DNA of 64,000 nt. Origin: Trichoplax adhaerens (Eukaryota > Animalia > Placozoa). The notes below the pieces were generated by a model. The model was not told the DNA's origin. It worked only from the letters and a program-made list of their open reading frames with translations, and searched no databases. The position numbers were made by a program, and so were the translations under genes. Positions 1,938-64,000 of the stretch are shown in pieces (position 1 is the stretch's first letter; each line of letters opens with the position of its first letter). The stretch is from the NCBI RefSeq assembly GCF_000150275.1, contig NW_002060945.1, positions 1,182,199 to 1,246,198 of the forward strand. Reading direction: 5' to 3'.

Positions 1938-4345
<2,408 letters not shown>

Positions 4346-22601: not shown

Positions 22602-25600
22602 ATGATGGATTTGGAGAGAATATTGGAATTACATGTTACAGTATCAATCGGTAAGTCTCAAAATACAAAGTATCAATAAAGCCAAAATAACGCTGAACAT
22701 AATATTGTAATCTTATTTTAAGCGAAAATTACTTCCAACCTTGATTTTATAACAACAATCAATAAATAGTGCCTATAACTTGCCGGAAAACATTTTACAT
22801 GATATGACGGTAGCGGATACATAGAAGAATTAGATTATTAAAGGTTCAAAAAACTGAAAACATTAAATTAGTCTATATTAGAGACTGTGACTATCAAACT
22901 TAAAGACTGTTGACAAAGTAAAGCTACATTAATTTATTGCTAGATCTGCTTTATCACCCTCTAAAGCTACTAAGTAATGTAGGATGTTGTGAAACTCTTT
23001 GTTGATACAATGATTATTTCCCTGGATACATCGCGCTTACATGTAATTTTCAACATTAGCGATATTGATAGTCTTCTAAAATGAATTAAAATGGGTAAAA
23101 TATGTTCACTTTACAGTACTATATATCTTTCTTCTATTATCATCTATTAATGTTACAAAGTACTGTCGAACATTGTGAAAAATTTTTACTATAATTTACA
23201 TTCGCCTTGACAGCTATCGCTACTTGTAATATTTTTACCGTCATAAATAATTAATCGTAGCCTTGTCAGCTAGATTAGAACTTGTGTGAGAAGTAGTTCT
23301 AAAACCCCGCACTTTATCCCACAACAATCTCGGACAATTAAAGTCAACTTCCTTCCAATTTTTGAAATGCCTAATTAGAAATTAAAAATTTAAATTACAA
23401 GCATAATTTAATTGATGATCATGTTTATAAGTTGCTGACACTTGTATCAGTATTACTGTTATATCGCCCTTCTAAACGTACCATATCACAGTGGAAAATT
23501 TAATTCTCGAACTACGTATGATTATTAACTGATATAGCTAATACGATCACATTTAACTTTAGCGAGTATATTTAGTGACTTATGTCTCTAAAGCTTTATT
23601 TGAAGTTTTAAATTGGCCATAAGTTAGACAGAAGAAATTGCTCATCTCTGACTTTTTCTTTATTACCGTACATCTTTTTCACTGTGATTAAGAACTTGAT
23701 GTTTTGTTTATAATTAATTATAAATAGATCCAATTTAAAAGACTGTACCTCATTTAAATCAGTACTCCCGGTATAAGCGTTTATTGCGATCATTGTTTGA
23801 AGCTTCCCTTAAAATTTTACTTGGAGTTATAAACCGATCTAACTTAAAAAGGATTCCTTCCGTTTCATCCAGTACCTTATATTATTCGTCATGATTGTTA
23901 TTTGAAAAACATTTTCATTAATCAAAAAACATGTTCTCATCTATCTTTTATTCCAAACAGATGAAAACGAAGCATTAGATGCAGCTGTTGAACAATATTT
24001 TCAACAAGTGGAAAAAGATTTGGTAGGTAGATGGGAAATTCAAATCATACCGTAGAATATTTGTGTAGAACTCAATTATTTTTTACGTATTCGTTCTCAA
24101 GCGTCTTTTCTGTTTGACTTGATAAGATTATACTTGAAATATTACTTATGTTTTGGGCGTCGATATTAGTTTAGTCTTTGTTTACTGGAGTCTACTATAG
24201 TGTTCAATAGCAATACAATAACTTCAACAAAAGTAATAGCTTGCCTTAATTGTTTAGTAACTTGTACTGTACAGTATAGCAAGATTACCCAGGATATGTA
24301 CTATAGTTCGCTATTTAATTAATGATAACAATCGATTAAAACTTGAGTCATTTATTTAGCTAAGATTATTTTACCTTACATAGCAGTATCCTCATAAATC
24401 ATGAAGTTTGACTTGATCGGTATTAACAAACGTAATCGCCCAACCAAGTGCCGTTAACAGATCTAAAAATAATATTGTTAACTTAATGGATATTCTGCTG
24501 GATTAATCTCGTTAACAAAACGGATAAGTATGCAGAGTACTTTGCCTCGCATACTCTTTTGAGTCTATCATATAGACTGGGGTTAATAAATATTATCAAC
24601 TAGCTTATAATAATTAGATTATGGTCTAATCAAGAATTTATACAGCTAAAAATAGCATTGATTACGGCCATTCTGCGGGATTGATCTCGCTAACGAAATA
24701 GATAATGCATAGATTACTTTGTCTTGCATACTCTTTTGAGTCTTATCATTAGATGGGACTGATAAATATTATTCACTAGCTGGTAATCAAGAATTAAGAC
24801 AGTTTAAAGATAACATTGTTAACGGACATTACGCTGGATTAATCTCGCTAAGGATATAGATAAGGTGTAGATTACTTTGTCTAGCATGCTCTTTTGAATC
24901 TTACCATTTAGAATGGGCAAATGAATACTATTAGCTAGTCGATAATCTAATCAAGGATTAATACAGTTAAAAAACATTGATAACAGCCATTCTACTTGAT
25001 CTATCCATTGTTAACAGTATAGATATAGAAAGCGTTGATGGATTTACCTTATTAACTCTCTTAAATCGAGCTACTTTGACATGATCAATCTTCTTTATCT
25101 GATAATTAATTAACCCAATCAACGATTGAAATAGTCAAAGGCAGGATGGACAGGGGGCATTCTATTAGATGCATTCATTGTTAACAGCATAGATAAAAGA
25201 AAATATTGATAACTGAGCTCTATCAATTCTTTTAAATGAAGTCATTTTTAATCAATACTAACTGTCTGACATGTCTAATCAAGCGTTAATACATAGTTAA
25301 AGATAAGATTGATAACGGTATTCAATTTTTGATCACTTCATTTATTAGCAGTATTAGGTACAGGTAGTGTTGATCGCTATACCTTATCAGCGCTCTTCAA
25401 TCGACTAATTTTAGATCAAATAATTTTGAACGTTTATAGAAGCTTACTTTATAAGCTAACTTGATGATCTAATCACGATCAATTTATTTAATAAAGAAAT
25501 CATCGATAGTTAATGTTTTTACTTGATCAGCAATTTTAATTGTATTATCGGATGTTATAACATAACAGAAAAACTATATTGCAGTCGAATTTTTAACATT

Positions 25601-28600
25601 ATTCATTTTTATCTGAGTGATCATTAAAAGCTTCTTTTAAAATATTGTAAACATAAATAAATATGTTATCGTTCAATATATATTTTATAATCTTCTAGCC
25701 AAAATTCTTAGAAACTTTGGCAAGCCTATGGGCTGATAACAATCGATCCTATCTAGCTCGGATAGCGGTAGGAATGCTTATCAAGAATTATCTTATCTAT
25801 CCTTTGGATACCTTGAAAGAGAGATATTATAAAAGATGGAAAGAATTGGATAGAAATTCTAAAGATTGTATTAAAACCGCGGTAACGTAAAAATTATTAT
25901 ATACGTACGATATAACCTTGTTACGGTGTTGTCTTGTCATTAGGATAGTTTAATAAGTACGGTAGTAGCTAGTGTGGAGAATATCCATATTTGTAGTGCT
26001 AGGTAAGATAAGTAATACCTTAACGTGGATGTTGTTTGTGATAGTTCATTACATATTTGATTTGATATTGATTGTTATTGTGTCATAGATAACAGTAAGA
26101 TGATTCAAGTTCTAGTTGATGATAATTGAATTAGATAACCTACGTGCTTAGATTAAGATTAAGTATGAGTAAGAGATTCAAAATATTTACTGATAGAAAA
26201 GCTATGTAAGGGTAAGGTATAATAATAATACTGTTGTTGTTCACAAATTAGACGGTTCCTATATAAACGGGAACATTTGAGTTGAGTGGGGTGGTAAAAA
26301 CTTGTAGATGTATCTTTACTAATAAAAGTTTTATCTTTACAGTATTTTACTGTGTGTGTTTAACGTTAAGTAAAAGGGCGTTTAAGTCAGTAGCTACTTA
26401 TAGACTTTTACTGTACGTTACCTTATCGCAGAAGTGAAATTGTGACAATCCTATAGATATACTATGATTCTGTGGAGTCTTACCTTAATGATCATCTACC
26501 ACTTAAAAGATGTTACAAGCACTGGATACCGAGTCAAGCCGACCTTCGTATGTTACTGAGGTATTTGTTACCTTAATCATTAATAAATATAGTGTTTAGA
26601 ATGGCTATAATTACATTAAATAATGTAAAAATTTGAAATGATACTGTAACAGAATAGCGAAATCATAGCTATTCTAGACTTTTCTGTTTGATATTGTTAT
26701 TAATAAATATAATTTGTAAACGTGACATTATCAATTAACTAACGGTATAATAGGAATTTTAGATAAACCTTGGCTATAGTACAACATGGTTTTCCTAGTT
26801 AAATTTCTTCCACATGCTTAATTAATAGCTTATTGACATTGTTATTGCTTTCTGGTGATTTTAGTGTATTGGCTATGTTGTATACTATGAATTATTGGAG
26901 GATGCCGATCCTAAATTGATTCCAGCACTAGCGGAAAACATGATTAATAAGTCCAGTTCAAAAATATTAAAAGAATCATCTGCAGAGGCTATCGGTCATA
27001 TTTTTCGTTTAATGAAAAATGTGGTAAGATTTATACTTTTAACGAATTCATTCAATGGCTTTGCTACTTTCTATTTTGTGCCGTATTGCTCAGTTTTACA
27101 TTTACTGTATATTGTATAGGAGAATGATTATTTAATATTAGAATCCGATCATGTATTAGCTGCTTTATTAAATGGGATCAATTGGAAAGATGCAAGGTAG
27201 TATCTGTATAGCATTATGGACCAATCTTTTTTCGGTGTGCACAGTTGTTTGTGTCCTTATGTAGATTAAACCCTTAGGGAGTATTTCCACTTAATATGTT
27301 TCTAATCAATTAGTCAACGTGTTCAAAATACGATAATGACAGCTTTAAGTCACTTCCTGACATATGTGAAAGAAAATATCAAAAGAGACGTAAGTTATGC
27401 CTTGTTATTTTTCTATAAGTTGAGTTCGTTCGCTACGATTAAATTTTAAATTTAAGATTATTTAATCTTGTAGTAATATTTAATAAGAGGCCTTAATTAT
27501 GCTTTTATACGGTAATGGCTTATTGTGCACGATATTCATTCAATTTAATTAGAGTGCAGATTTCAAAAGTAGTTGGGCATATTTTAATTTTTAAATTCTA
27601 AAGAGAGACATAAACAATGTGAATCTTATCAAGCTTTACAAAATGTTTCCTTATTGTAGTTAGATTATGAGTTTTATATTTATGTATGTCTACTTTGGTA
27701 TTTAAGTTTTAACTACAGTAGATATCAAATATAAATACCTGTAATAACGGCTTCAATACTTTATTTAACTAAATTATAGTAAAGTATATATCTTAAGACT
27801 ATCCGCCTCAAATCCTATTACTATCCATTTCAACTAATATTTTTTAACTTAAATCTTTACGCTTTCATGGAATAATGACCATGATAGGCTATAAAGAATA
27901 CGCTACTATTTCATCAAGAGGAAGATGAAGTGATTGATATGAAATATATAAAATATAAAACTATCCCTGAACGCGATGATGACATATTTATTGAAAATAA
28001 TGGCGTGGTTAGTCATCATATTTGGATAGATTAGTTACCTATGAGCAAAGGCATTCCGTCATAGCTAAATTTTCCACCAAATAAATTTAAATAGGAACAT
28101 AAATCCAATGGATCATTATCAAGAATAAGCAATGTTGACTACGTGGTTAAAAATGCTCTAGGTTACATGGTGCCAACATTATTAGAATTAATGGCCATTC
28201 AGGTAGGAATTTCTCTTCTTCAGATATCAGAAATATTACGGTAACTTACAAGGTGGATATCATCACATTGATTAATTTGAAAACCATTTATAGGACGATC
28301 TTGATTGTGATGATGACTTCTTACCATTCGCAACGGTAAGACAGTGTTTTCATGCTATTGGTGCGATTTACCAAGTTGATGTCTTTGAAATTATGAAAGA
28401 TATAATGAAAGATAGCATTCACGAACATCAATTTCAATGCAGAGCGGCAGCCGTAATCGCTTTAGGTACCTACTGTATAGCCTTGAGACAGAACATATCA
28501 ATTAGCTATAGACAAGAAAAGATTCTAATGTTAATATTAAGGGTAGCTGCTAACTAAAATTGAATTTTAGGTTCATTTTCGGAATTTCTACAGATTAATA

Positions 28601-31600
28601 AAGATAAACATCAAGAATTTCTAAATTCTGTTAGTATCTATGGCTTACCAAGATGTGTATAGTTAATTATGTCATGAAAGAAACCTTATCTTTACAATTA
28701 ATACTATTTCCCATTTTAATTAAATAGCTTATACAGATATTAATGAAAATGATACAAGATGATAATGAAATTATACGTCAGTGTGTTGTATGGGCATTAG
28801 GCAAAATTGCAAGAAAGTCGTTGAAAATATTAGAGAGAAATGTTATAGAGTCGATTGTTGATGTCTTGATGGAGAAATTTCATGGGAGTATCAAGGTTAC
28901 AGCAAGTATTTGCAAGGTAATTCAGTGTTTTAATTTCAAAAGAGGAAATAAAGTCTACCATGATGGCTTAATAATAGCTTGTGTCTGTTGGAAATAAGGC
29001 ATTCACATCACTAGGTATAGAAGCTTATCGCCTTCAAGGTGGCGATCCAATCCCGTATTATTATCGACTATCACTTTATTACGAAGAAATTGTGATGGAA
29101 TTACTTCACATTGCCGATAAGTAAACAACCTTATAGGTTAATTAGCTATTCGATTTTAGCTCAAATTAAGCCATTGATTGCAATTCTTGATGGTAGGTAT
29201 TGGAAAATGGATGGTAAAGACGCCTGTAAAATGTTTCAAATTGTATATCAATCATTACAGCAGTTTATACAATATAGTCCGATTGTAAGAATTGTTACTT
29301 TCTTTCCATATTGACTCGATAATCTATATATATTGAAACCTGAGTAAATTTCAATCAAAATTTAATTATGATGTATAGGATTGCTATGATGATGTCAAAA
29401 CGGTTGCTACTATTATCAAGAATAAATTAAGAGTGACTTTACGGGAAGAAAAAGTCAGTTTAAAACAGTTGATTGGTTTTAAGCTTGCCTTCGAATTTTG
29501 ATATTTTTTACTTAATGACAGAATGAACAAGATCATGTTAAACAAGTTGAGCTGCAATGCAGACTGTGTGAAGTACTACAGGTTAGATGAAAAAGTAAAA
29601 TAAAACTGAAAGCAATGGAATAAATTTTAGATACCGTAGTAAATTTTTAAGTATTCGTACTGGTGGATTGATAACTTCGATTGCGAATTATAGAAATTTA
29701 TACAAAGAGCTCATAGTGATGATATTGCAAAATGGAAAGATGGCCTTATAACTTTAATAATATCGGTATTTAAATCATCTACTGACGGGAGTGGCAATCT
29801 CCAAAGCATAACATTATCCAATTTGGCTACACTTGCTGAAAGTAATAAATTAATATACAGTAATATCTGACTCTAGAGTTCTATTGAAATCAACTGTTCT
29901 TTTAAGATTGAATTAATATACGTGTAAAGGTGCATTTTTCTGCTTTATGTGCATACTAGCAGATGATGAACTTACCGAGTCTGATTAGAAGAATTTACTG
30001 TTTAGCTATATAGATCCAATAATTTAATATCTGTGCACATAAATTAGTATCTAGTCGTTGTGTGCTGTGTAATTTTACTGCATAGTAACGATACTCGAGT
30101 GCATCAGATCTGATTAAGTTTATTATTTTAATTCGTTTCGATTAAATATGATAAATTTGATATGCTGTACTATCGTTACTCTGTGTAGTTATAGTTATAT
30201 AATAGTGATGCATCGGGCTTAAATCCGTTTCGATTAGTTATGATAGATTTGGCATACTGTGCTATCGTTCTTCTGTGTAATTATGTAAGTAATAATGCTC
30301 AGTCGTATCAAAGCTGATTAAAATTTACTATTTTAATCTGTTTCGATTAGTTATGATGAATTTAATATACTGTACGTACTACTGCGTCATTCTTTAATAT
30401 TTTGAGTATGTATTACATGCACTAAATGAGATTGAGCAGTTGGTTCCTTTTCTTTTCCATGAGTTAAGATTAACATGACTATAGCCAGCATAATAACTAT
30501 GTTTAGGGTATATAATACTAAATGAATTATTATTTCAAATGTAATCTTATAATACAGGGATTAGAGTAGATCTATCAGATTACATAAAGCATATTTACAA
30601 GATGATACCATGTCTAATAATTGGATTAAAGGACACTTATCGCAATCAAGTGAGTATAATATTGCAAGTAGCAGCTAAAATAGGAGCTAATTATTATACA
30701 AGTGAATTTCTTATGTCCCTGTGCAGTTTAAGTTTCCAGTTTTATGCTTTTAGGGTCGAAAAAGTATGTGGTAATTCTGATAATTGACCTATCGAAAATC
30801 GATATTTTATCTGTAAAGGTATTTATTTCAGCGGTTCGCACACTGAAACCTGTCTGCAGGAAATTAAGAACTAACTTTGTTCCTTATTGTTTCGAAATTA
30901 TTACTATCCTACTTAATAAAATAACGGTAAGTTATTAACAGTTGTTATAATCTATTTGATCGCAAATAGGGTATATCATAGCATAGCTTTTGATATAGCG
31001 TAATCACCGTTATTGACATGAAGCTTTCTTCACGCTAGGATATTCCATTTTGTTCATGTTTTAATCAAGACATAATAGCAGCTCTTGGAAACATCGCTGA
31101 AAGTATTGGAATGTACTTTGAAAGCTATCTACAACCTGTATTGGAAGCCGTTGATCATGTAGCAGTTAATACAAATCCTGTAAGTTTTATTCAATTATTT
31201 CACCTTAATTCTGAAATTTGGGTGGCTAATAGAATCTCTAATCTATCCTTCAAATCATGAAAAATATTATTAAAGGGAGATCTTGGCATCAATTCTTGCC
31301 AATTGAGAGATCTTAGAACGACTTGTTTAGAAACTTATAAGCGCATCCTATCTATTACCGGTAATTTCAATAGTATTTTTGGAGATCGATTGATATATCA
31401 AGATGATACTAAGGGGTAGATAACATTATCCTACGTGTGCATTATCGATTTTTCATCCTTTTATACCAATTTTAGTGAATAGAGATTTAATTCGTTCCCA
31501 TATTGGCAATATAGTCAAGTTGATCGATATTTTGGCAACTTCAGAACAATTATCTCGTGAAGAACTCTCTAATACAGCACAAATATTAAGGTAGGGTTAA

Positions 31601-31823
31601 TTTTAAATCTCTCAATGTTTTTTTATTAACAAAATTTCTTAAATGAAAACTTATCGATATTTTCTCTAGATACTTATCGAGTAAGCATGGAAACTCAACC
31701 GTTCAATCATTTCTATCAAGTAAGATTATCAAATGGTTGAAATCTGGCATACAAGATATTGATCATCAAAAGACAGCCTACATATGTAGACAAACATTAG
31801 ATCAGCTAAGTCTGTCGATGTAG
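22602..31823 (+). CDS. KPNB1-like: Divergent importin subunit beta-1-like HEAT-repeat karyopherin, ~20 exons
   Basis: Collinear with KPNB1 from N- to C-terminus: MDLERILE, ARIAVGMLIKNYL, RW, LDTESSRPS, LIPALAEN..KESSAEAIGHI, acidic loop DDLDCDDD, RAAAVIALG, VVWALGKI, AFTSL..EAY, DCYDDV, LRTTCLETY. Spliced frame is open to TAG 31821-31823 if the decayed exon at ~27550-27690 is skipped. Confidence 0.85.
24480..25540. repeat. Degenerate intronic tandem repeat, ~160-180 bp unit, 6-7 copies
   Basis: Recurrent attct.c.ggatt.atctcg.taac / ctcttttga.tc / tctaatcaag motifs near 24490, 24666, 24823, 24986, 25157 and 25317, in intron 2 of the importin-beta gene. Confidence 0.75.
30060..30380. repeat. 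Intronic tandem repeat, ~90-115 bp unit x3
   Basis: gtttcgatta..tatgat..attt..at..ctgt motif at ~30135, 30227 and 30340. Confidence 0.75.
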
Positions 31824-32039: not shown

Positions 32040-33600
32040 ACTTCTCCCTTTTACATTCACCTAGTACCAGTTAGAATACCCTCGTAATAATGGTCCTCTT
32101 GTCATTGATTAATAATATATCAAGGTATTGAAAAAAGAGTTCTTACTTTTGTAACATCATGATGTGGTGTTTCATCTTTGGTATTAGTTTAGGAAATGAA
32201 ATACTATCGAGAATATTTTTATACTGAAAGAGGGAAACCTCTTAATCAAAATAGCAATTACAACGGGTTGACAGTTTTGTGTAGTTGTCGATCGAGATAT
32301 TAACGGAAGTCAGAAAAAAGCGAATCAACTATTTAGTTAACAAAGATTGGTTTTAATGCAATCGTATTATCGATGCTCTATTCCATTTTAGTAAAATGAA
32401 CCCTGTTGATTGTAATGGAAGTTAGAAGGGATGCAATAGTTATTTTGCATTTGCTAATTATGATTGGTATTAAATAATATCAATTATAAAAGTACGAGTA
32501 ATCATACTATCAGATATATTTCTAGTTAAACAAATGAAAACCCATGATTGCAAAGACATATATATAAATCAAATAGACCAGTTATTTGTATGTAATGGCC
32601 TAGATTAGTATTGATAACTTTCATATTTTAATTCTTACTCTTTCGGATTAATTTCAGCATCTCTTTCACGATTTTATCGTTAGGGAAGATTTTACACTAA
32701 TTTAGGATTACATTTAAATTAATAAACGACTAATTGTAGTCAATCAATGTAATTATTCTACGAGTGTTAAAAGACTTAAGAAAGTCGAAAGAAATTTCTA
32801 AAGTCCAAAGCAGCTTTTCGGATGACCTTGCTATTACGAATGAAATCACTAGTAATTTATGGAGAAGAAACTGAGCAATGTTCATGGCTTTCTGTCCAAG
32901 CATAAATGTCATTGATAGAGTACAGAACTTAAATGTAAGTAATAGATTGGAAATTTTTGTCTGGTTAATACTGTATCACTGATCGATTCCTGTAAAGTAG
33001 TGGAGACTAGATTGTAAATCAATTGCAGGAATGAAGAGGAGATATTAAGTCAGGCAGAAACATCAAATTCTTATAGATCCAAAATTTGACTACCTCTTTT
33101 ACTCATGTTTTTCAAGCAATTTAAAGAGGGAATTCTGTTGGAAGCCCCTGAGGTTTTCCTAGAATGATTGAGATGATCTCAAATACCTGATATAGAATTT
33201 TTTCTAGCTCCAGATGTACTTGATGGCAGTAATCAACATACTCATAGCAATTATCGAGATTACATAAAGTATAGTAACACAAGGAAAGAAAGCACTACCA
33301 AACATTGTAGATGTTTAAATTGTGACATATTTAATTTAGAACGCTCATTATATACTTGTATAACCAGGGACTACTACGCATAAAAAGAAAGAGACGTAAA
33401 GCGATCGTCGACTATACTAATAATGTGCAGGCTGATTATTTTACTGGTTATTTCAACTGTATCGCATATCTGCAAAGACACACTATCCTGTCCTTGATTG
33501 ACATCTAAATTAGATGCTAATATGTTGCTAAGTTGGTTTTGTGCTGTATGATGTGCGGTTTCATTGGTACAGTATAGTAGAATGATCGAAAAAATGATAG
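32040..33600 (-). pseudogene. Truncated remnant of an importin-alpha-like paralog (5' part)
   Basis: 32638-32910 aligns at DNA level to 45533-45800 (exon DEITEELLKLIRKS plus neighbouring intron, e.g. shared ctaaagtccaaagcagcttttcggatgacc). Splice signals and frames are decayed, and there is no room for the 3' exons before the importin-beta end. Outer limits are approximate. Confidence 0.65.
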
Positions 33601-34130: not shown

Positions 34131-34999
34131 ATTATTGCGCTATGCTCTTGAATACTATATTGATATATAGCACTAATGTGTACGCGTATACTCATATTAA
34201 GATATTATGATGCCGCAAAATCCGAACTTTCCACAATTGCAATCATAATGATTATATACTCAAGTGAAAAGGTTTAGCTTATCAAAACCTACAATAATAA
34301 TTACTTTACTGTAGTACTCGTATAGTATTTACTTTAAAATGACATTGCTTTTACCGTAAATTAGCTATGTAATTTTCATTGAACGTATGGTCCTCTAAAT
34401 ATTTCTTAGTACAAAAAAATGTAAATGAAATACCATACGTAGTTGTAGTCAGATAGAACTATTTTGTAAGTTCTCATAGTATACAATAGAGATACAGCTA
34501 ACAGCCTAATTTTGTATAAGATTTTATTGTTAATGAATGAAGCATGTTTAATAACTCTGAATAAGCATAACTGCTCATGTCCAATTTAACAAGGCTAAAA
34601 AAAAATTTATTCACAGCTACTCCCAGTTACCCTGCTACAACTAAAAAATATAGTCTAAATACTTTAAGCTAGCATAGTTTCTACAACTACAGTAAAGTAG
34701 GAGGAAAGAAGATATTTTACGGATCTCCTAATATTGTAAATATATGTAGTACCTAAGTAGTCAAATGATAGGCTGGGTATAAAATGTTGCACTCTTACTA
34801 TGATATCACATGATATATAGAGATTTCACAAATGCCAGTTTGTTAATTTATGGAGTTAAAACGGTTAGAAGATTGTTTTAAAACTTCTAAACACCGACTA
34901 AACCAGATCTGGAATGCCGCTAATAATAAAAAGTTGTCAGAAAGGGCGTAGACTACTCGTACGTATATTGGAGTAGGAAATTCCCAGCAAAAGATGATG

Positions 35000-37900: not shown

Positions 37901-38187
37901 GCAAAACCAGTCAGATTGGAATCCTCAGGAATTACGACTGAGCTCAATCGTTTCAATATCGCCTAATTTTTTTCCAGTTTAACAGTGACAGGGAATTTAT
38001 TGATTTGACCTTTTTCGAATGAGCTTCAAAGTAGCTGAAAATTTTCAAGAGTAGTCTTATGCGATTTATTGTTTTCAGCATCGATGAGAAATATATAAAC
38101 TGTGGCGCAAGTTTCAGCACCTTTATAATTGTCAGTTTTGACGTAAATAATATAATCGACTTCGTAATCGTCCTTGGTGCAGTCTAT
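35000..38187 (-). pseudogene. Lipoxygenase pseudogene (PLAT + LOX), paralog of 49851-54527
   Basis: PLAT exon (YIIYVKTDNYKGA...FEKGQINKFP...DWFCE...FPIHRW...KWDCVLPQ) has probable ATG->ATA, in-frame TGA stops and frameshifts. QRLQGVNPV exon and final exon HLNPKNIPNAISI* are present. Exons carrying the HxxxxH and HAAVN iron ligands are absent between ~35460 and ~35900. Confidence 0.92.
36450..36791. mobile_element. MITE-like element with long imperfect terminal inverted repeats inside a LOX-pseudogene intron
   Basis: tgctaggtcaagtttccttagc (36450) versus the reverse complement of gctcagtaaacttgacctagca (ends 36791), 20/22 match, with weaker inward symmetry. No coding capacity. Confidence 0.6.
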
Positions 38188-48420: not shown

Positions 48421-49850
48421 TATACTGTACGGATAATATTTAACTTTAGCTGTTTAATATTTATTTATTGAAGTTTATTAGAAAGGTAGTACTGCCATTG
48501 TTACAATAGCAGCCTACACCAATTCGCTAGGATAAAATAGAGATGGAAATATTTATAGATTGATTATGATATGATATTCTTGGATATTGGCCTATCCAGA
48601 TGCAGAATCTAATGCAGTAGACAGTGGTTGAATTTAACGGAAGGAGCGAAAGTGTTTAGTATAGCCATCCAGTGTAATAGATTGTTTGCGAGATATTTCA
48701 ATTTTTTTGCTAGTCAATCACTTGAGCAGAAGTTGTTACCACATTTAATCGATCTCTTTTAAGAAACGGCCATTAAGATTCTATGAAATGTTGCTTCTCC
48801 TCAATTTCAGTCATAACTGCATACAGCGAAACTTTGGTTGTTTATCAAAACTTATTTTTATCAAGAAGAGGGAAGAGAGGGAGAGGAGTATACGATGGAA
48901 TAAGGATAACATTTATACTTGAGTAGTCCCTGTCATTATTCTGCACTAAAAGTTTTCCGAAGAGATCACTGCTTTTCCTGTGGAGTGGATACGTGTATGT
49001 AGCTGTGTAATTTATTTTTCAGTGAGCACAAGGTGCTGGAACTATTTTTTTCACTACAATTCATCAGGTAAATTGGCTTACACAAACACATACACTACTC
49101 CATCATACGAGTACTGTATACCAGAAGAATATAATACTTTGCGACTGGAATTAGCACAGATCTATCTACGCTAGTAACTGTACAAATAGCATCGCAGTCA
49201 GTGTTGGGATCCTTAGTCTTACAGCATTTCACAATAAAGCAAAGTCGCGTCTTAGTTGCGTTTGGTTTACACTTTTTTTAGTTACAGTTAACTATGATTG
49301 CTGACAACGTGCTGGGCAAGGAGGGAATGAAAAACCGAAGAAAAAGAGCCTAACCGCATTTTTATAACATTTCGAACATTGAGAGCGGTAATTTCCTGTT
49401 TCATATTACAACATACGAACATTGATATACAGTACTGTAATGATAAACTACATTTTAGGTATCAAGATGCAGTTTATGTAGTTTGAACTAAAATTTATTG
49501 TTAGTGAAGAAGCTACTCATATAACCTTGGGTAAGTTTAGTCAATCACATTTTATTTAAAGAAACATCACATCCAATTTAAAGAAACATCACATCGATTA
49601 CTCCTTATAGTTAAAAGTCTATTTTAAGTAGTTCAGTCTTCGTCAATTTTTAGCATGATATTTAGAAGTTGCACCAAATACCATCTACAGTAGTGAATTT
49701 ACGAAGCTGAAGCTATTAAGAAAGTTGCTGACAACTTTTTTAAACGATGAATAAGAAAGTTTAAAATACTAATAGCAATGAAAATTATCTAGATGGATGT
49801 AGACCTTATACGCCTTTGCACGAGTAGGATATGCAAAACCAAATAAGAAG

Positions 49851-52800
49851 TTAAATACTTATGGCGTTGGGAATATTTTTCGGGTTCAAATGATTGTAAG
49901 CTATACGTCTGTGCTTATTTCTCTCATCAATTATTGCCGAAGCTTCCTTGAGTTCAATATTAAATCTATTGAATAAGAAAATAACAATTTAATCTTGTTA
50001 AAATCAAATTCTAGAAATAGTACGTGAAGTATAGGTGAGAATTTGCTCCATTTATGTCATAAACTAAAGGCTATTGGATGATTATTTGTGCTGTTATAAT
50101 TCAGATTAAAATATCGATAATACCATCAAATAACTTACTGTTTTAATGCTGCTACCCCCACTGGATCATAGGTGTAATTGACCTCAAAATCGCCCAATGA
50201 TTCCGTCGCACGCTGACTAAGAACCCTGGTAATTGTCATTATGCTTACATCATGGGTTTGTTAGGTAACTGCTTAAGGAGATCAGCTTCAGTGATGGGTG
50301 ACTAAAGTTTAGGTATCAAGGATAGAGCAATTATGAGCATATTTTGATATTTCCGTAGATATACAGTATTGTAGTATTCGTACATCCAATCACTAAAGTA
50401 TAAAATTTAAAAAATCTTGTACCTCAGTGAATTGTAGGCTATTGTACTAATATTATACTAAATTACGTGGATTAATTAAGTCTTTAGTAAAGTACTTTCG
50501 AGTCCAAGTAACTTACTGTACATAACTACCAAAATTACTAACGAAATAGTTATCGTCATGTTTTCTTAATCGGTACAAAAACTAAGATACTATAGTAATC
50601 CAACGATATCTAAATCACTTCTAATAACTTCAACTATAGTTTTAATATTTAATTTGTATCGATACGTACTAATAGTTTAACAACTAACTAAATGACTTTC
50701 TATAGTAGCTATCAACACGACGATCTCTAGAATATACAAAAATATACTTTATCTCGTGGTGCTTTCCCGTTCATAAATGCTGGATAATTAGGGGGGAAAC
50801 CATATTCATCGTATTGGCCAAAGTTAACTGCTGCATGGATAGCACTAGAAGTAAATATGAATGATGTGAATGCACTAATAATTTCTTCCTGTGTTTCAAA
50901 TTTGCCGTTGCCGGGTACTCCTTTAATTTCACAACCCTCAGGATAAGGTGCTACAAGTATTTCAGCAAAATTTTGCAATTCGAAATCATTGGCTATATCA
51001 TTCTTATTTTTATAATGGCCATTAACAACCCCGGCAACATAATTCTTGATGCAGTTCCAAACAAGTAATCCATCATCTCGATAAGGATAATCTGGCAGTA
51101 TTTTGGGATCATCCAGCTATTTAGTTGGAGAATAAAAATCAACATTAAATAATTGTAGTTTATAATACGCTAGTGGTTAGATCGAAGCGATATATAACTT
51201 ATTTATAAAATCATAAATGACTTCCATGATAATCTCTTAGCTGCGTGAATTAAACTATCTCGCCGTTATAGCTATACTCGTACCTTACGGGCTTTTATTT
51301 CTTCCGGCAGGGTACCTTCTACATTTAATCGCCACACTTTGAATTGGTGAGCGATAATATCTAATACCCCATCACGGCCAGCTGTCATAGTTGTGTCTAT
51401 CCAGCCATCAGGTGCTAATAGGGATGTAATCGCTAAACTATATTTAACGATTGAAGGAGAAATGATCAGAGCACTGAATAGCAATTTAAGTTTTAAGTTA
51501 CATCGATGAATGTACAGTATTATGTATTAATTTAGTTTATAATGTTGATAGGATAATTTAGGGTATATCAGTATTGCGCTAAATCGTATCAATTTAGGGT
51601 TCTACCTGTTGATAGCCATAAGGTAAAGGAAATGAGGTGCGATCAGACGATGCAAGGGATGAGACATGCTTAGTGTGCGATTAACAGCCACTGCAATGGA
51701 TTCAATGATCAAGTGGGTGAAGCCTGAATTTATAGTAAATTTAGATAGAATTCAATAAATTGTATACTGTACAATGTATACATACTAATGCAATGACTAA
51801 AATAATAATTCTAATACTATATTAAATATCGTCACAAAACAAAGCTCTGATAGTATAAAGATTGTAGATTGTAGAAAAGAACCTATCTTTACGTAAACTT
51901 TTACCTAAATGCGTGCTAGATTGATGAACCATAGCATCAGCATTATTGTAAAACATTTTGGCTAACTTCCAGACATTTCCATCGGTCGGCAGGAAAACCT
52001 ACAGTACGTGCGTCATAATTCAAATAGCGTCAAAAATTAAATTATATTATATTATTGAAATTTTAAACAGTACATTATCTTATTAAAGAGGTAATGGTGA
52101 AGTGCCATCATGCTCTCCAATATTACTATCATTTGTTGTATTTACCGTATGGGGATATCTCTTGTCGGTAGTTGCAAACAATTGTATCGCAACGGGTGTT
52201 AATTCATCTTCTTTATTTAAGTAGAAGAGTGCATAAGGATGTACCAGCTAGGAAATATAAAGTAGCAAGCAGATGTAGAGTCTTAATTCAATATGTGTAC
52301 TAGATGATTTCAAATGCTATAGAATATAATGGAGCAGATGATATTTTAGATAGAGATTTTTTAAAGTTTTGTATCACATACATACATAGTTCTGTATGTG
52401 GATGATCTTTCTATAGGAAAGAGTATAGTACAACAGCTTGTTAATAACTATGAATAGCTAACCTCTTTGTCAAGCGGAACACCCGCAAGCGGTACACTAT
52501 GTAGCATTGATAAATCGCAAAGGAAAATTTTATTCTTGCTGACAGCGTCATCTAAAGTGTAGCCTTCCAAGAATGGCTTAAGCATGTCGTTCGTAACATC
52601 GAGACTAATTAATATATAGAAGGTTTTACCGTTAATTTACGTACAATCTTTAAGTAGTCTTTTAAGATTATTAAATTTGCATCTTACGCTGACGGAATTT
52701 TGGTACATAATTGCATTATAACCGGATTACAGCCTTGGGTGCGCTGTTTGGCGAAATAGCTGTCCTCATCCCATCTATATCTGCCCTAATAAGCAATAGA

Positions 52801-54527
52801 TAGTAATGGGAAGGGTTAATCCATTACAAAGGATATTTTTCTGGTTTCCCTACGAATGTACAACTTCATATTGATACCAACATGAATGAAGTTCTAATTA
52901 TCAACATTAAGAGGCGACAAAACAGTATTTGTCAGTAATAGTTCAACTTCCTCTAGCATACCTGAGGAACGTCAAAGCCACACCCTGTCTGATAGAGGTT
53001 GCTGATATCATCCACTGACTTCCAATCGCCGCTGAAAACCTTTGCTAGGTTGCCCACAATGCCTAAACTGGCTCCTGATAGTATTAGAACATCATTCTAT
53101 ATCCGAATAAAATATAGGACGGCAAATAATTCTCTTAGATACACACGTATAAATATCTGAAAATTACCGCGAGAAATTCATAATTTATTTAATCTTCTTT
53201 AATCATTAATACCTTAAATTAAAGTACATCAAATCTATTTAACTACAACATTAGTAATATGATAAGAAAGACAGTAATTTAAAATCTCAAACGCTTTACA
53301 CCTACTTGGTAGTGGTCGGTGAACATTTCTTGTTGAGGTAAATCTTTAACCTGCGGTTAGTTAATAAATAAGGGTATTAAAAAAAACTGAACAGTAAATT
53401 ATCACATTGCCACGCCAACACATTTATTATATTATTAAGTAAATAACTGTTCAAATGAACAGCTCGAAGTCAAATACATTATATAATAGTTTTATGTGTC
53501 ATAACTATAAAGTAATTTCAAATGCTGTGATCGTATTTGATAGAATACAATATATAACAATGCATAATTGCACTTGTGGCGTTGCAGACAACTTGATAAA
53601 GGCATAGCTTAGCTGATTGCTTTAGCTAATACTATCATTGATTGCTTATACGATCGTTACTCAAGTAATAAGGATTTACTATGCATATCTCGACGTCATT
53701 TAGACAATGTTTATGGTAATTTCTTGCTATCTAATGAAACAATAGGTTTCATAAGCATGTAATATAATATCAATCTTCGATATCTAACTCGAATTAGATA
53801 TAATTAATTACAATAGACCATAGTACATATCTGATCTTCATTTACGTCCGCTTACAAGACTGGGAAATTAAATTGAATTTATAAAAAAATTTTTACAAAT
53901 ATTTAGCAGTAATGTAAAGGAATCGTGATTTTTTCTACTTTTTACGACCCCAAAATCATAAAAATTTGTCATTTGAGTTGATACTACTATTGCGTTGGCT
54001 TTTAAAAGTTGTACACCAGAAGATATTTGCTGTTATTTATTTAGTACCTGTGCAGGAACACCAGGAAATTTCCTATCAAGTACGTAGTGTGTCTGCTTTT
54101 CCTGGATTTCTTTTGCACGTTGCTGAGGTGATGCATCATTTTGGGGTAAGGAGCAATCCCACTTTTGAATTTTTAAGGTAACATACTGTCTTAACCAACG
54201 ATTGATTGGGAAGTAGACTGGTGCGGGCGTACCTCCGACCTGTTCATTGACGACCCAAACACATTCACAAAACCAGTTACCACCAAATCCCCAAATGCCA
54301 CGACTGATTTCAATAAATTTAAGATCAGCTAAGCCAGATATATCGCTAACAGGGAACTTATTCGTTTGGCCTTTTTCGAATTTACCTCCAAATATATCAT
54401 CAGTAAGGGTAATATTGCGTGATTTTTTACCGTTGACATCGATGAATGTTATATAGATACTGACATCAGTGCTAGCGCCTTTATAATCTGCAGTTTTAAT
54501 GTAAATGGTGTAATCCGGGTTAGACAT
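49851..54527 (-). CDS. Animal-type lipoxygenase (N-terminal PLAT domain + non-heme-iron LOX domain), 12 exons, with one -1 frameshift in exon 11
   Basis: PLAT exon 54048-54527; QRTQGCNPV; LTPVAIQL; WKLAKMFYNNAD..HQSSTHLGFTHL; HPLHRLIAPHF; YPYRDDG; HAAVNFGQ; C-terminal IPNAISI*. All iron ligands are present. The frame breaks at ATG ATG TA AGC (50245-50247). Confidence 0.93.
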
Positions 54528-55194: not shown

Positions 55195-57370
55195 GCCATA
55201 TTGTGTGTTGTCTGTTTGTATCATCATCGAAGACGCGAGGACTGCCACCCTCTATCATAATTACGTATTTTTCTCGTCCTTACTTTAGTTGTCGATTTTA
55301 TGTCTTATAAATGATTCTAGTATAAATTATAGAGTAAGATACTATATACTATTCAGTGTAAATGTAATTGTACGTTATGCAAATGGGAGTGAAGATACAG
55401 AACACTACTTTGCAAAAGTAATCAATTAATTGAAATTGATCTAGCTCGAAATCGAGTCACTAAGCTGAGCTAATCTGACTCGCAAATGTGTTATTAGTCT
55501 CTGATTCCAGTATTCAGAGAACAGACTAGATCAGAAATAATTTTAATGTTCGAAATACTTCATGCATGAGGAGCTAGAATAGTTATAAAATGTTAACGCC
55601 TTTGACATAAAAAGCTCTCGTTGTATTAAAACCTTCTTATTATGTGTACATGGAGTGTGTACGCGTCTGTGAACACCATACACGCAATTGTAAGATTGTG
55701 ATTAGTTAACTTTGTAAGCCCCCACTTATTGTCATTAAAGTTTTTCAAGTTCCTTACGCCATTGTTCTATGAAATTTTGAAATCTACTTTGATTCGTTCT
55801 ACTGTATATAATTCAATTCCATTAAACAGAGTACGAAATGATCGATTTTTCTTTTTGCAGTAGTTTCGCTTATAGCGATCCTTTCTCCCTTTCAGCCACT
55901 GAAACTATAGCAATTATCGCCAAAAATCACCTAATTTTATCGTCGACACTTCCCTACGCTATACTAAGCGACTCCTCTTTTCATTTAGACCTGCAATCAA
56001 ACTTTATTCTTCAAAGTTCCCATTTGTGCTTGTTGAAGTTTTCTGTTACTTGGACGAGATAATTGTTTGCCACTACAGCGGAAAAACATTGCTTTAATTA
56101 AGTTATTGTTCTATGGTTAGAGGAGGTGTGGCATAGTTCTTGCTATAGTACTGTACATATTGTACAGTACAACATACAGTACAGTACAGTACTGTACTGT
56201 ATGTACACTTAGGATTTAAGGAGGTGTGGCATAAGTGAGTAGGAGGTGTGGCATGAGAGTCTGAAAGCTGTGAAATCTCGAACACGTGACCATTAATGTT
56301 GGTCTTGTTCCTGTTTCCCCTTCCACATTTTTCGTCGCCTTTTATATTGGATTTCTTCATCAGTGATCGTTCTATTTTCCAATCAATGGATTACCCTTGT
56401 AAAGTTGCAGTAGCAATACTGTAAATGAAAAATACGGAGTTAACTGCATATTGGGTATTTCCCTTCTTCAAATAGAGCAAAATACGGGCACAATAATGCT
56501 AGCAGCCTATATAGTTTTCTCCAGTTGATTGCTTCTATTCTCTGTACTTGTTATTGGCTTTGAATTCAGTCTTTATACTGTACTGTCATTAGTCAATCAT
56601 GATTAACAACATTCGTATATATCCTGTACCTTGGTGATATCTTGTTCTTGGTTATTGTCATCACAAAGGATATACTGTGCCATATTGTATGCTGTTTGTT
56701 TGTATTAACATCGAGGACTGCCACCCTCTATCGTAATTACGTATTTTTCTCGTCCTTACTTTAGTTGTCGATTTTATGTCTTATAAATGATTCTAGTATA
56801 AATTATAGAGTATGATACTATATACTATTCAGTGTAAAAGTATTTGTACGTTATGCAAATGAGAGTGAAGATACAGAACACTACTTCGCAAAAGTAATCT
56901 ATTAATTGAAATTGAGCTAGCTCGAAATCGAGTCATTAAGCTGAGCTAAGCTGACTCGCANATGTATTATTAGTCTGTGATTCCAGTATTCAGAGAACAG
57001 ACTAGATCAGAAATAATTTTAATGTTNNNNNNNNNNNNNNNNNNNNNNNNNNNNNNNNNNNNNNNNNNNNNNNNNNTGTTTGGCACTACAGTACTGTACA
57101 GCGGAAAAACATCGCATTAATTAATAAGTTATTGTTCTATGGTTAGAGGAGGTGTGGCATAGTTATTGTTAGAGTATAATACAACATAGGATGGAGGTGT
57201 GGTATGAGTGCTGAAAGCTGTGAAATCTCGAACACGTGACCATTAAGAGCTCAAATGTTGGACTAATTTCCTGTTAGCCTTCTACTTTTTTCGTCGTCTT
57301 TATATTGTATTTCTTCATCAGTGATCCTTCTATTTTCCAATTAATGGATTACCCTTGTAAAGTTGCAGTA
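55195..57370. repeat. Local tandem duplication with a fragment of the importin-alpha-like 5' region at the junction
   Basis: 55195-55549 matches 56680-57026; 56064-56411 matches 57077-57370; 56413-56669 matches 46503-46759 (end of importin-alpha-like exon 1 plus intron). Confidence 0.9.
57027..57076. other. Assembly gap (50 N)
   Basis: Run of N characters. Confidence 1.
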
Positions 57371-61878: not shown

Positions 61879-64000
61879 CTATTTGTGGTATTTGTTTTCC
61901 ATGGGGTGCAATAGGTGAATAAGTTCCATTGCTAAAGGTGCAACGGACCACCACGGACCATGTCTTCTCATCATTTCAAGCTTTAATAGTACTAAAACAA
62001 AGAAATTGAGCAATTTTTCAGTGATTAGCTTGAATTTTATTGACTGTAATAAGAATATCAAAATAACAATTGTTTACATTTTATAAATATAATTTTCTAT
62101 TTTGTAATCTAGATTACATAATTTTCTATTTTGTGATCTAGATTATATAATTTTCTTAAATTTTTCAGATACAGTATATCATACTTTCACTTTTGTTATT
62201 TTCCAAAATTTTTGGCAATTGCTGTAATAGTGAGTATAAAATGGATAAGATTTCAAATTCGCCGTTTCTATCAAGCCAACACTGTTCCGGGTATAAGACC
62301 ACAGCGAGATCGTATGTATTACATATTTGTTATCTAGTAACGAAAGAATAGTACCTTGCTCTTCTTGACAATTTCTGCCATTCCTTCTATTATTTTTCTC
62401 ACAATCTAGAATTTAGATAAATAAAAGAAAATTTGTGCACTATACTTTCCCAAGTAACTCTCTAAGCTATTATTGATAACATTAGTATTAGAAAATTTGT
62501 AAAGAATAGCTTCTTATTTATTAATCATCAATAATTAATGGTAAGCTATACTGCCATAAGTGAGAATTATACCGCGCGGTCTTCACTTTTCATCAGTGTA
62601 TCGTGTAAATATTGTATGATGTATTGATTTATTACTAATTGTTCCATCTATAGAATAAAAGATATCCTTTCGTTAGGGCGAATCTTTGATGTAGAAGTTC
62701 AATATAGAGTATCAATAAATTTGATACATAATTTTGAAAATGATACCTGCTCAGTAGTTGCTAATCTTGCTATATCAGTCAGAGCTCTTATTGTCAGTAC
62801 GGTTGGCAAGTCCGAAATCTAGAAAAATATTAAAGAATTATCATCTTGCAGTTGCAAGCACATAGATTATGAAAAAATTGATGGAGTAAATGTGTAAGTC
62901 TGTACTACGGTATTTATAGTATAGACAAACCTTGCGGGTTGCCGTGAAGATAACGGAGAATAGATCGTGATCGATTATACCCTTCATTTAGTTGTAAAGC
63001 GCGATAATTAGACGATAGAGTACAAGTTAATTGTTATGCGCATGATATTGATATACCTGTAATAACATGCTATCCGAACTAGCCAGGCCATATAAAAATT
63101 GTAAAGCACTCTGTCAATTCAAATGCATAAATTCGTATAAAAAATGAGTACAATAATTCTAGTCAGTAAATATTCTTAATATTGTATAAGTTGCTATTTC
63201 TGACATGAAATTCGTTATGAGTATCTAGAAGTGTTATTTTCAGTACAGGAATCACTTTCAGTCCTATTAATATCTGGTAAAAACAAAAACGTAAATTAAT
63301 TTTTTACTACGTAGAAATAATTCGAGTTGCATATTTAAATTTTTAATATACTAATACCTTAACATCATGACGATCATCAAATCCGTGAACTAGCAGCACA
63401 TGTAATATTTCTAGTGCATCTTTCTAGAGTTTAAAAATTTTTCAATTTTCAAAATATTTTGAGCATTATGATCTGATATTTGATAGTAATACCGAATTAA
63501 ACAATTTTTAGTTCTTACACATAAACGCGGTGATTGACTTGCTAAAATCTCGTAAATACGAACGACAGGTATTTTCTTAAGTGCTGCCTATTGCGTGCAA
63601 ATAAAATTGCATATAATCACACAAAAAGATAGCAAAGACTCAATTTAACGTGTTGTTATTTGGCTACATGATCAGTATTAGTCTATATCGAAATCATGAC
63701 ATAGTATACTAAACTTTCAATACAACACATTTTCATTCATTATAAATACTGTAAGTAATAGGATGGATATCTAACCATAACTTCTTCATTGGAATGTTGT
63801 GATAAATTTGCAATGGATGATGATAAAATTTGATTTTTTTCAGTAAGTAGAGAGTGTAAAATCTTCGTAACTTCAATACATATCTATGGATGAAGAAATT
63901 TTATATTACTGTAATTACTAACCCTAAATTAACTGTAACAGATATGATTTGGATGATGCTACCATACATCGATATCGTTTGACTTTAAGAAATCGGACAG
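61879..64000 (-). CDS. KPNA-like: Second divergent importin-alpha-like ARM gene, 3' half (5' end beyond window)
   Basis: Exon series matches 41983-46926 in length and phase: AALKKIPVVRIYEILASQSPRLC (vs QALASIPCHRIFEILKTMDLQLH), SALQFLYGLASSDSMLLQ (18 aa), GIIDHDLFSVIFTATRK (17), MEQLVINQYIIQYLHDTLMKSEDRA (25), IVRKIIEGMAEIVKKSK (17), QLPK. The final exon frame is ambiguous (stop at 62018 or 61879). Confidence 0.72.

What the first reader, a model, noticed from the sequence alone, without database searches (positions are those of the whole stretch)
22602..64000. Clustered non-canonical karyopherin set: divergent importin-beta facing an expanded family of divergent importin-alphas
Seen: one importin-beta-like gene (+) converges on at least three importin-alpha-like loci (-), at 32-33.6 kb, 42-47 kb and 62-64 kb. 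Established: importin alpha and beta1 are normally very conserved, are unlinked in most animals, and bind via the basic IBB domain. Here both partners are extremely diverged, and both sides of the interface appear altered (see separate findings). Inference: a lineage-specific, co-evolving alternative import or decoy module. It recalls the fast-evolving duplicated nuclear-transport genes linked to genetic conflict in Drosophila.
Basis: partly seen in the sequence, partly recalled or inferred. Interest (0 to 1): 0.8.

Follow-up and report, generated by a model that had tools for sequence, protein, structure and literature searches.

The report
Importin-beta duplicate beside divergent armadillo-repeat genes
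This placozoan (Trichoplax-type) region holds a real, strongly diverged extra copy of the nuclear-import receptor importin-beta1 next to members and wrecks of a fast-evolving 10-gene armadillo-repeat family, but nothing shows these repeat genes are importin-alphas or partner the beta copy.

Summary
Partly confirmed.

**Importin-beta copy.** The + strand gene (about 23.95-31.82 kb) is an intact, full-length paralog of importin-beta1. About 17 stop-free exon matches are collinear with the canonical KPNB1 gene on the same scaffold. Identity is 28-67% per match, about 37% on average. PDB matches are importin-beta1 only.

**Minus-strand loci.** They belong to one family, but they are unequal.
- 61.9-64.0 kb is the 3' part of an intact gene, C1. 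It has a tandem twin and eight further relatives.
- 42-47 kb (X-B) is a very distant member with a frameshift.
- "32-33.6 kb" is only a 270-bp relic.

**What the family is.** It is ARM/HEAT-like. Its best exon matches the designed armadillo consensus in the correct register, and its exons score above background with an importin-alpha repeat model. No IBB domain, no localised Arm_3 match and no Pfam Arm score over threshold was found, so "importin-alpha" is unproven.

**Other points.**
- Canonical importin-alpha and -beta genes exist elsewhere in the genome.
A LOX + ARM-gene block duplication explains the layout.
- The assembly gap lies in a non-coding 1.48-kb tandem repeat and touches no exon.
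- No evidence supports a co-evolving alpha/beta module.
- The scan noted this family before on adjoining DNA (s1-742979) and similar genes elsewhere (s1-766205, s1-766210).

The parts
23951..31823 (+). Diverged importin-beta1 (KPNB1) paralog. About 17 recognised exons run from the second coding exon (23951-24025) to the last exon and stop codon (31647-31823). The ATG exon was not located.
   Evidence: Collinear stop-free HSP chain to the canonical KPNB1 locus L001 (C1412:1581.5-1586.1 kb), 28-67% identity per HSP, mean about 37%. PDB phmmer returns only importin beta-1. Pfam HEAT 25.1 bits; TPR_IMB1 E 0.0011.
28297..28485 (+). Exon of the beta paralog that holds the HEAT-8 acidic loop. The loop is partly kept (four Asp), and the Trp that follows it is replaced by Phe.
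   Evidence: Alignment to the canonical Trichoplax-type KPNB1 exon. PDB match to importin beta-1 residues 334-392.
32638..32907 (-). X-A: a 270-bp relic of an ARM-family gene, covering two small exons and the intron between them. The acceptor AG of the second exon is lost.
   Evidence: 77% nucleotide identity to 45533-45800. Exon and intron are equally conserved. These are the only two copies in the genome. No other family exon was found in 31.9-34.9 kb.
34971..38196 (-). Lipoxygenase paralog A (PLAT + LOX). Not part of any karyopherin set.
   Evidence: Exon-wise 36-64% aa identity to paralog B; about 64-67% nucleotide identity. Weak Pfam Lipoxygenase hit.
42085..46926 (-). X-B: a very divergent member of the ARM-repeat family, probably a decaying copy.
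   Evidence: The family exon-3 HMM hits 45106-45228 (E 0.0025-0.007) and the exon-7 HMM hits 44030-44161 (E 0.002). The two hits are collinear with family spacing. blastp links to two members. Splice phases of the SSP exon are conserved. No Pfam, PDB or representative-library hit.
45627..45784 (-). Frameshift in X-B. One exon reads in two frames (45784-45641, then 45728-45627), while X-A reads it in a single frame. A 1-bp difference in an A-run causes the shift.
   Evidence: DNA alignment A3, column 141. Translations of the stop-free pieces.
49822..54527 (-). Lipoxygenase paralog B (PLAT + LOX).
   Evidence: Pfam PLAT 66.5 bits and Lipoxygenase 89.2 bits.
55195..57370 (.). Local tandem repeat with a 1484-bp unit. 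It contains the assembly gap 57027-57076. Part of the unit is also copied at 46503-46759.
   Evidence: Self-blastn. Genome search found only local copies plus unplaced contig C607.
61891..64000 (-). C1: an intact member of the ARM-repeat family. The 3' two-thirds lies in the window. Its 5' exons, including the best-conserved 'SSPYE' exon, lie 0.4-0.9 kb beyond the window end (L006:403-889).
   Evidence: About 15 collinear exons at 35-71% aa identity to tandem paralog C2 (L006, about 5160-8380), with introns that cannot be aligned. dN/dS about 0.35 against 0.80 in a shifted frame.

Best explanation
Two unrelated kinds of helical-repeat gene lie side by side because of local duplications. They are not a demonstrated transport pair.

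(1) The + strand gene is an intact, fast-evolving duplicate of importin-beta1. It was most likely copied within the chromosome from the canonical KPNB1 gene, which lies about 370 kb away on the same scaffold. It keeps the full exon order, the N-terminal Ran-binding region, most of the acidic loop and a conserved groove Trp. Inference: it probably still works as a RanGTP-regulated transport receptor with changed cargo or adaptor preference.

(2) The minus-strand loci belong to a placozoan family of 10 rapidly diverging ARM-type repeat genes, 8 of them in a 107-kb cluster that starts in this window. These genes have no IBB domain. In the one repeat that could be aligned to the ARM consensus, the NLS-binding Trp and Asn positions are replaced. 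Inference: the intact members most likely act as protein-binding scaffolds independent of importin-beta.

Inside the window, a block of 'lipoxygenase + downstream ARM gene' was duplicated in tandem. The ARM gene of copy A has decayed to a 270-bp relic. That of copy B (X-B) is highly diverged and frameshifted. Only C1, at the window's right edge, looks functional.
For: Beta paralog:
- Collinear chain of stop-free exon matches covering KPNB1 from exon 2 to the C-terminus.
- The only genomic relative of the acidic-loop exon is canonical KPNB1.
- PDB hits are exclusively importin beta-1, at matching residues.
- Pfam HEAT is over its cut-off.
- About 600 aligned codons contain no stop, in a window where 7.5% of codons are stops.

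Family:
- C1 and C2 share about 15 collinear exons, with dN/dS about 0.35.
- The SSPYE-exon profile finds exactly 10 places in the genome.
- X-B membership is shown.

ARM nature:
- The A4 profile hits designed armadillo proteins in the H2-H3 register, and beta-catenin weakly.
- Pfam Arm gives E 0.036 in the right register.
- hhalign gives P 0.0016 in the right register.
- The 53 family exons score above background with an HMM of 22 importin-alpha repeats from this genome (Mann-Whitney p 2e-5).
- The language-model neighbours are all HEAT/ARM clusters (a lead only).

Duplication and decay.

Canonical importins elsewhere.
Against: - No transcript or full-length protein evidence could be used. 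All comparisons are exon by exon, so exon limits, start codons and the intactness of C1 and of the beta paralog are inferred.
- One HEAT exon of the beta paralog (the equivalent of L001:6520-6639) was not found.
- The X-B frameshift is a 1-bp difference in an A-run and could be an assembly error.
- The ARM signal per exon is weak (7.9 bits per repeat; probability 16%).
- A descent from importin-alpha is not excluded. One intron position and phase is shared with one canonical importin-alpha. One member has a weak Arm_3-like exon (E 0.055). One unlocated exon hits Arm_3 at E 0.008.
Confidence: 0.7

Rival explanations
1. The beta paralog and the ARM genes are a co-evolving, lineage-specific alternative import or decoy module: diverged importin-alphas that pair with a diverged importin-beta.
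For: The beta paralog lies within 1 kb of the first family relic and 30 kb from the first intact member. Both gene kinds are strongly diverged. The family's repeats resemble the importin-alpha-type ARM consensus. One intron position and phase is shared with a canonical importin-alpha.
Against: No IBB anywhere in the cluster; the genome has only two IBB hits, both in canonical genes. No Arm_3 hit in the cluster. The two family loci nearest the beta gene are a relic and a frameshifted copy. Lipoxygenase genes are interleaved, and the layout follows a block duplication. No co-evolution test was possible.
Confidence: 0.08
2. The ARM family descends from importin-alpha by loss of the IBB and of the NLS groove. 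It acts without importin-beta, for example as a cargo or CAS decoy or as a scaffold. The linkage to the beta paralog is coincidental.
For: The 'LL-SSP...' H2-H3 motif resembles the importin-alpha repeats of this genome. Exon scores are enriched with an importin-alpha repeat HMM. There is a weak Arm_3-like exon in member L018 and a weak Pfam Arm_3 hit in one exon. The summed exon matches are roughly the size of ten ARM repeats. Other IBB-less importin-alpha-like genes with Arm and weak Arm_3 hits exist in this genome.
Against: The family exon HMMs find nothing in the canonical importin-alpha loci or in L013 at E<1. The best natural PDB hit is beta-catenin, not importin-alpha. ARM repeats of different families share the same consensus, so the signals do not discriminate between them.
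Confidence: 0.3
3. Most of what the reader saw is dead DNA. The beta paralog and the ARM loci are pseudogenes in neutral decay.
For: X-A is a 270-bp relic and X-B has a frameshift. The codon-usage score of the X-A and X-B pieces is at background level. An X-B exon finds nothing in 1.84 billion representatives.
Against: About 600 aligned codons of the beta paralog and about 430 of C1 are free of stops despite 60-65% amino-acid divergence (against the stop rate). C1/C2 exons are conserved while their introns cannot be aligned, with dN/dS about 0.35. Splice sites and phases are kept.
Confidence: 0.07

Closest known systems
Importin subunit beta-1 (KPNB1; canonical copy of this genome at C1412:1581.5-1586.1 kb)
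   Same: Same exon order over the whole length. The N-terminal Ran-binding region, the HEAT repeats, the acidic-loop exon and the C-terminal exons all align. PDB hits are only importin beta-1.
   Different: Only about 37% identity within the matched stretches. Pfam IBN_N and TPR_IMB1 fall below threshold. The Trp after the acidic loop is Phe. One HEAT exon was not found.
Importin-alpha (KPNA; three canonical genes in this genome: C1410:1.250 Mb, C1410:5.916 Mb, C1411:0.936 Mb)
   Same: ARM-type repeats with a similar H2-H3 motif. The overall size is about ten repeats. One intron position and phase is shared with one canonical gene.
   Different: No IBB. No localised Arm_3 match. No Pfam Arm hit over threshold. 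The Trp and Asn positions of the best-conserved repeat are replaced. There is no direct sequence hit to the canonical loci.
Duplicated, fast-evolving nuclear-transport genes of Drosophila (importin-alpha, Ntf-2 and Ran paralogs). From my own knowledge, not checked here.
   Same: Lineage-specific duplication and rapid divergence of a nuclear-transport gene, here the beta paralog.
   Different: No evidence here for germline expression, positive selection or genetic conflict. The Drosophila cases are mostly retrogenes, whereas this copy keeps the parental introns.
Designed and consensus armadillo repeat proteins, and beta-catenin repeats
   Same: The family's best-conserved exon aligns to the ARM H2-H3 consensus in the correct register.
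   Different: The match is 7.9 bits per repeat. The consensus Trp and Asn are not kept.

Membership tests
Importin-beta1 (KPNB1) | Collinear similarity over the whole HEAT solenoid to a bona fide KPNB1 | tested here: met
   About 17 collinear exon HSPs run from exon 2 to the last exon against the canonical gene (L001), E down to 1e-10.
Importin-beta1 (KPNB1) | N-terminal importin-beta (IBN_N) Ran-binding domain | tested here: inconclusive
   Exon 25699-25884 aligns to the canonical IBN_N exon (31% identity, E 1.6e-8). Pfam IBN_N did not reach E<=1 on the exon and was not reported in the genome scan.
Importin-beta1 (KPNB1) | HEAT repeats and the HEAT-8 acidic loop | tested here: met
   Pfam HEAT 25.1 bits against a cut-off of 23.5. 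The acidic-loop exon matches importin beta-1 residues 334-392 and keeps four Asp.
Importin-beta1 (KPNB1) | Binding of RanGTP, FG-nucleoporins and IBB | not testable with these tools
   Needs a full-length spliced model and a binding assay or complex prediction.
Importin-alpha (KPNA) | N-terminal IBB domain | tested here: not met
   A genome-wide six-frame scan with PF01749 found only two hits, both in canonical genes on C1410. No IBB hit appeared in any scanned piece of the loci.
Importin-alpha (KPNA) | Array of Pfam-recognisable Arm repeats with the Trp/Asn NLS-binding ladder | tested here: not met
   The best Pfam Arm result is E 0.036 (14.6 bits, cut-off 20.6), in one member outside the window. 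In the best-conserved repeat the consensus Trp and Asn positions hold other residues.
Importin-alpha (KPNA) | C-terminal atypical repeat (Arm_3, the CAS-binding region) | tested here: inconclusive
   No hit in the cluster in the genome scan. One unlocated exon of 53 hit at E 0.008. A local HMM gave E 0.055 on L018:8464-8631, which Pfam did not confirm.
Armadillo-repeat superfamily | Repeated units of about 42 residues matching the ARM consensus in register | tested here: inconclusive
   Profile A4 hits designed ARM proteins (summed E 1.6e-12, but 7.9 bits per repeat) and beta-catenin at E 0.2. hhalign P 0.0016, probability 16%. Exon-score enrichment p 2e-5. Together these favour ARM, but no single match is significant.
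Lipoxygenase (neighbouring genes) | PLAT domain plus lipoxygenase catalytic domain | tested here: met
   PLAT 66.5 bits and Lipoxygenase 89.2 bits in paralog B. Paralog A is collinear with it.

The most novel reading that the evidence does not exclude
A placozoan-specific nuclear-transport side system. A retained, rapidly evolving importin-beta1 duplicate works with, or is antagonised by, an expanded family of IBB-less ARM proteins derived from importin-alpha. These proteins bind it, or its cargo, by a new interface. This would be a second import or decoy pathway kept together in one chromosomal cluster.
Probability: 0.07. Interest if true: 0.8.

Novelty: new member of a known kind. Interest (0 to 1): 0.4.

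Why it matters
Importin-beta1 is usually a single, highly conserved gene in animals (stated from my own knowledge, not checked here). An intact copy at about 37% identity in one of the simplest animals is therefore a candidate for a specialised transport receptor.

The 10-member ARM-type family with no recognisable domain hits has no assigned function. Beyond one exon search I could not test whether it is confined to placozoans. Knowing whether these genes are expressed, and in which of the few placozoan cell types, would show whether nuclear transport diversified early in animals or whether these are ordinary fast-evolving duplicates.

As it stands, the striking part of the claim, a paired alpha/beta module, has no support. 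The finding is of moderate interest.

Tried and rejected
- **Pfam on hand-picked X-A and X-B exons**, and on every stop-free piece of at least 33-36 aa on both strands of 38.4-49.8, 31.8-34.9 and 57.3-64 kb. Only a weak PHD finger was found.
- **blastp of window pieces against four importin-alpha/ARM loci of this genome**. No hit for the minus-strand loci.
- **Exhaustive HMMER search of X-B exon 44455-44691 against 1.84 billion representatives**. It returned only two spurious repetitive proteins. I first read the missing self-hit as 'not annotated'.
- **PDB phmmer with X-A and X-B exons** and the exon-7 profile: nothing.
- **Codon-usage log-odds**. The discriminator is too weak: the positive control scored 0.03 against a background of -0.1.
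- **Stop-density scan**. Stop-poor stretches also occur outside genes.
- **Rfam and tRNA scans**: nothing.
- **Exact-product look-up of the UGT ORF**, to reach the public annotation: not on record.
- **Literature searches** for Trichoplax karyopherins: nothing relevant.
- **Transposon idea for the repeat around the gap.** Rejected, because the copies are local only.
- **Locating the exon that gave Arm_3 E 0.008**: not found among the 21 exons rescanned.
- **Left out by the operators' rule.** I made no search, family scan or structure prediction with joined (spliced) models. Everything was done exon by exon by reference. The large word-index protein search was not used, because its length window cannot reach full-length relatives from single exons.
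Full report
**Setting.** The window is C1412:1182199-1246198 of a 105.6-Mb, 1414-contig, AT-rich (about 31% GC), intron-rich genome. Earlier notes of this scan call it Trichoplax adhaerens. I did not verify the species name independently. Exons are short, and a random reading frame hits a stop at 7.5% of codons. Open frames of 45-80 aa therefore occur by chance on both strands, and only homology counts as evidence.

**The gap.** N 57027-57076 (and one N at 56961) sits in a local tandem repeat.
- The unit is 55195-56678, and a second, partial copy is at 56679-57370.
- The left flank of the gap aligns to unit position about 356 and the right flank to about 880. About 520 bp of a unit is therefore missing, and the stated 50 N is an underestimate, or further copies are collapsed.
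- In the genome the unit occurs only here. A 257-bp piece is copied at 46503-46759, and the unplaced contig C607 carries copies at 98-99% identity.
- The gap lies between lipoxygenase B and gene C1. No exon discussed here crosses it, so nothing below depends on it.

**The importin-beta-like gene is real.**
- Stop-free pieces of the + strand between 23.95 and 31.82 kb match the canonical KPNB1 locus of the same scaffold. That locus was found with Pfam IBN_N and TPR_IMB1 at C1412:1581.5-1586.1 kb and fetched as L001.
- The matches are strictly collinear, from the exon after the start exon to the last exon. There are about 17 HSPs, 28-67% identical, about 37% on average, with E down to 1e-10.
- By eye, three more exons in 27.1-28.0 kb line up. 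One HEAT exon was not found.
- The acidic-loop exon has only itself and canonical KPNB1 as relatives in the genome.
- Two exons searched against the PDB hit importin beta-1 and nothing else, at residues 112-158 and 334-392.
- Pfam gives HEAT over its cut-off and a weak TPR_IMB1 match.
- About 600 aligned codons without a stop, against a 7.5% background, argues for long-term selection on the reading frame.
- The acidic loop keeps four Asp, but the Trp after it is Phe. A Trp that is conserved in the canonical Trichoplax-type gene is kept. From memory, it corresponds to a groove Trp of human importin-beta; this was not checked.
- The claim that the IBB-binding side is 'altered' is thus only partly visible.

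**The minus-strand loci.** At first they looked like noise.
- No Pfam family hit at E<=0.01 for any piece on either strand.
- No hit to four importin-alpha/ARM loci of this genome.
- Nothing in the PDB.
- Nothing for one X-B exon in 1.84 billion representative proteins. This blank may partly reflect withheld records of the window's own genome.

A note of this scan on the adjoining window (s1-742979, 'four-gene tandem family') made me extend to the right. That changed the picture.
- The 62-64 kb locus is the 3' part of a gene, C1, which runs to about 64.9 kb.
- C1 has a tandem twin, C2, 7.5 kb further on. About 15 exons match collinearly at 35-71% aa identity, while the introns no longer align.
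- dN/dS over the matched codons is about 0.35, against 0.80 in a shifted-frame control.
- The best-conserved exon has the motif D.I.LLI.LLSSPYE.LAIKS..IL..YAS (alignment A4). As a profile it finds exactly ten places in the genome: eight between C1412:1,227,316 and 1,333,870, one on C1410 and one on a small contig.

**X-B (42-47 kb) is one of the ten, but an outlier.**
- The exon-3 HMM, built without X-B, hits 45106-45228 at E 0.0025-0.007.
- An independent exon-7 HMM hits 44030-44161 at E 0.002. Strand, order and spacing (about 1 kb) match the family.
- Two pairwise blastp links exist.
- The SSP exon has a good acceptor and donor in the family's phases.

X-B also carries a defect. X-A reads the exon at 45.63-45.78 kb in one frame, whereas X-B needs two frames. 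The cause is a 1-bp difference in an A-run. Only the X-A frame splices in frame to the next small exon. This is either a real frameshift or an assembly error.

**X-A is only a relic.** The '32-33.6 kb' locus is only 32638-32907. It is 77% identical at the nucleotide level to X-B 45533-45800, with exon and intron equally conserved. The acceptor AG of its second exon is lost, and no other family exon lies nearby.

**Why the loci sit where they do.** They are paralogs. Each is followed downstream by an ARM-family locus, X-A and X-B respectively. The layout is therefore a tandem duplication of a 'lipoxygenase + ARM gene' block, after which the ARM copies decayed.

**Is the family importin-alpha?**

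Signals that favour ARM-type repeats:
- The A4 profile hits designed armadillo repeat proteins in the H2-H3 register. The summed E is 1.6e-12, but each repeat gives only 7.9 bits. Beta-catenin is hit at E 0.2. No natural importin-alpha is listed.
- Pfam Arm matches one member's SSP exon at E 0.036 in the right register.
- hhalign against importin-alpha repeats of this genome gives P 0.0016, probability 16%, in the right register.
- An HMM of 22 repeats from the three canonical importin-alpha genes scores the 53 conserved family exons above 3370 background pieces (p 2e-5; 25% against 7% positive scores).
- The language-model neighbours are all HEAT/ARM clusters (a lead only).

Signals specific to importin-alpha are absent or marginal:
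- No IBB: the genome has two hits, both in canonical genes.
- No Arm_3 hit in the cluster.
- One unlocated exon of 53 hits Arm_3 at E 0.008, where about 0.4 such hits are expected by chance.
- A local Arm_3 HMM gives E 0.055 on one member outside the window. Pfam did not confirm it.
- One intron position and phase is shared with one canonical importin-alpha.
- In the repeat that aligns to the consensus, the Trp and Asn positions carry other residues.

I therefore file the family as ARM-type. Descent from importin-alpha is possible (about 0.3) but not shown.

**The proposed module.** Canonical KPNB1 and three canonical importin-alpha genes (IBB, Arm and Arm_3 hits) exist elsewhere. Nothing, however, links the beta paralog functionally to the ARM family.
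- The family lacks the only known handle for importin-beta.
- The two loci nearest the beta gene are decayed.
- Unrelated genes are interleaved.
- Co-evolution could not be tested.

**Limits.** All tests are exon by exon by reference, which costs much sensitivity for repeat proteins. Start codons, exact exon limits and expression are unknown.

**Verdict.**
- Observation: partly confirmed.
- Interpretation: partly supported. A lineage-specific extra beta copy and an expanded divergent repeat family are real. Importin-alpha identity and a co-evolving pair are not shown.
- Novelty: new members of known kinds.
- Interest: moderate.

Noticed in passing
window 34971-38196 (-) and 49822-54527 (-): Two tandem lipoxygenase paralogs (PLAT + LOX, about 64-67% nucleotide identity in exons), each followed downstream by an ARM-family locus.
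   Followed up: partly
window 55195-57370; also 46503-46759; unplaced contig G000:C607: A local 1484-bp tandem repeat contains the assembly gap, where about 520 bp of a unit is missing. A 257-bp piece is copied next to the supposed first exon of X-B. A small unplaced contig holds copies at 98-99% identity and probably belongs in the gap.
   Followed up: yes
window 59835-59981 (+): A stop-free piece with a weak PHD-finger match (Pfam PHD E 0.0012, below the cut-off). It may be an exon of an unrecognised + strand gene between lipoxygenase B and C1.
   Followed up: no
window 18826-19887 (+), continuing to about 20317: UDP-glucuronosyl/glucosyl-transferase gene (Pfam UDPGT 202.6 bits) just upstream of the beta paralog.
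   Followed up: partly
window 24463-25025, 33679-34117 and 16818-17369: Tandem repeats of about 170-185 bp. The first lies in the long intron after the first recognised exon of the beta paralog. The second lies between X-A and lipoxygenase A.
   Followed up: no
window 25911-26189; L006:9722-10000; near L011:8388-8920: Dispersed repeat of about 280-450 bp (78-83% identity). Copies lie in an intron of the beta paralog, upstream of C2, and next to another family member.
   Followed up: no
window 39450-40350 and 47170-48430: Stretches that are unusually poor in stop codons in several frames at once. They have no Pfam or Rfam hit. The first is single-copy in the genome. Their nature is unknown.
   Followed up: partly
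G000:C1410:975370-977354 and C1410:1281950-1283476 (L013): Two further genes with Pfam Arm hits over the cut-off and weak Arm_3 matches but no IBB hit. They are IBB-less importin-alpha-like genes, distinct from the SSPYE family.
   Followed up: partly
window 3320-4345 (+): A 341-aa open frame rich in Asp, Glu, Ser and Gln, overlapped by long antisense open frames. Not examined.
   Followed up: no
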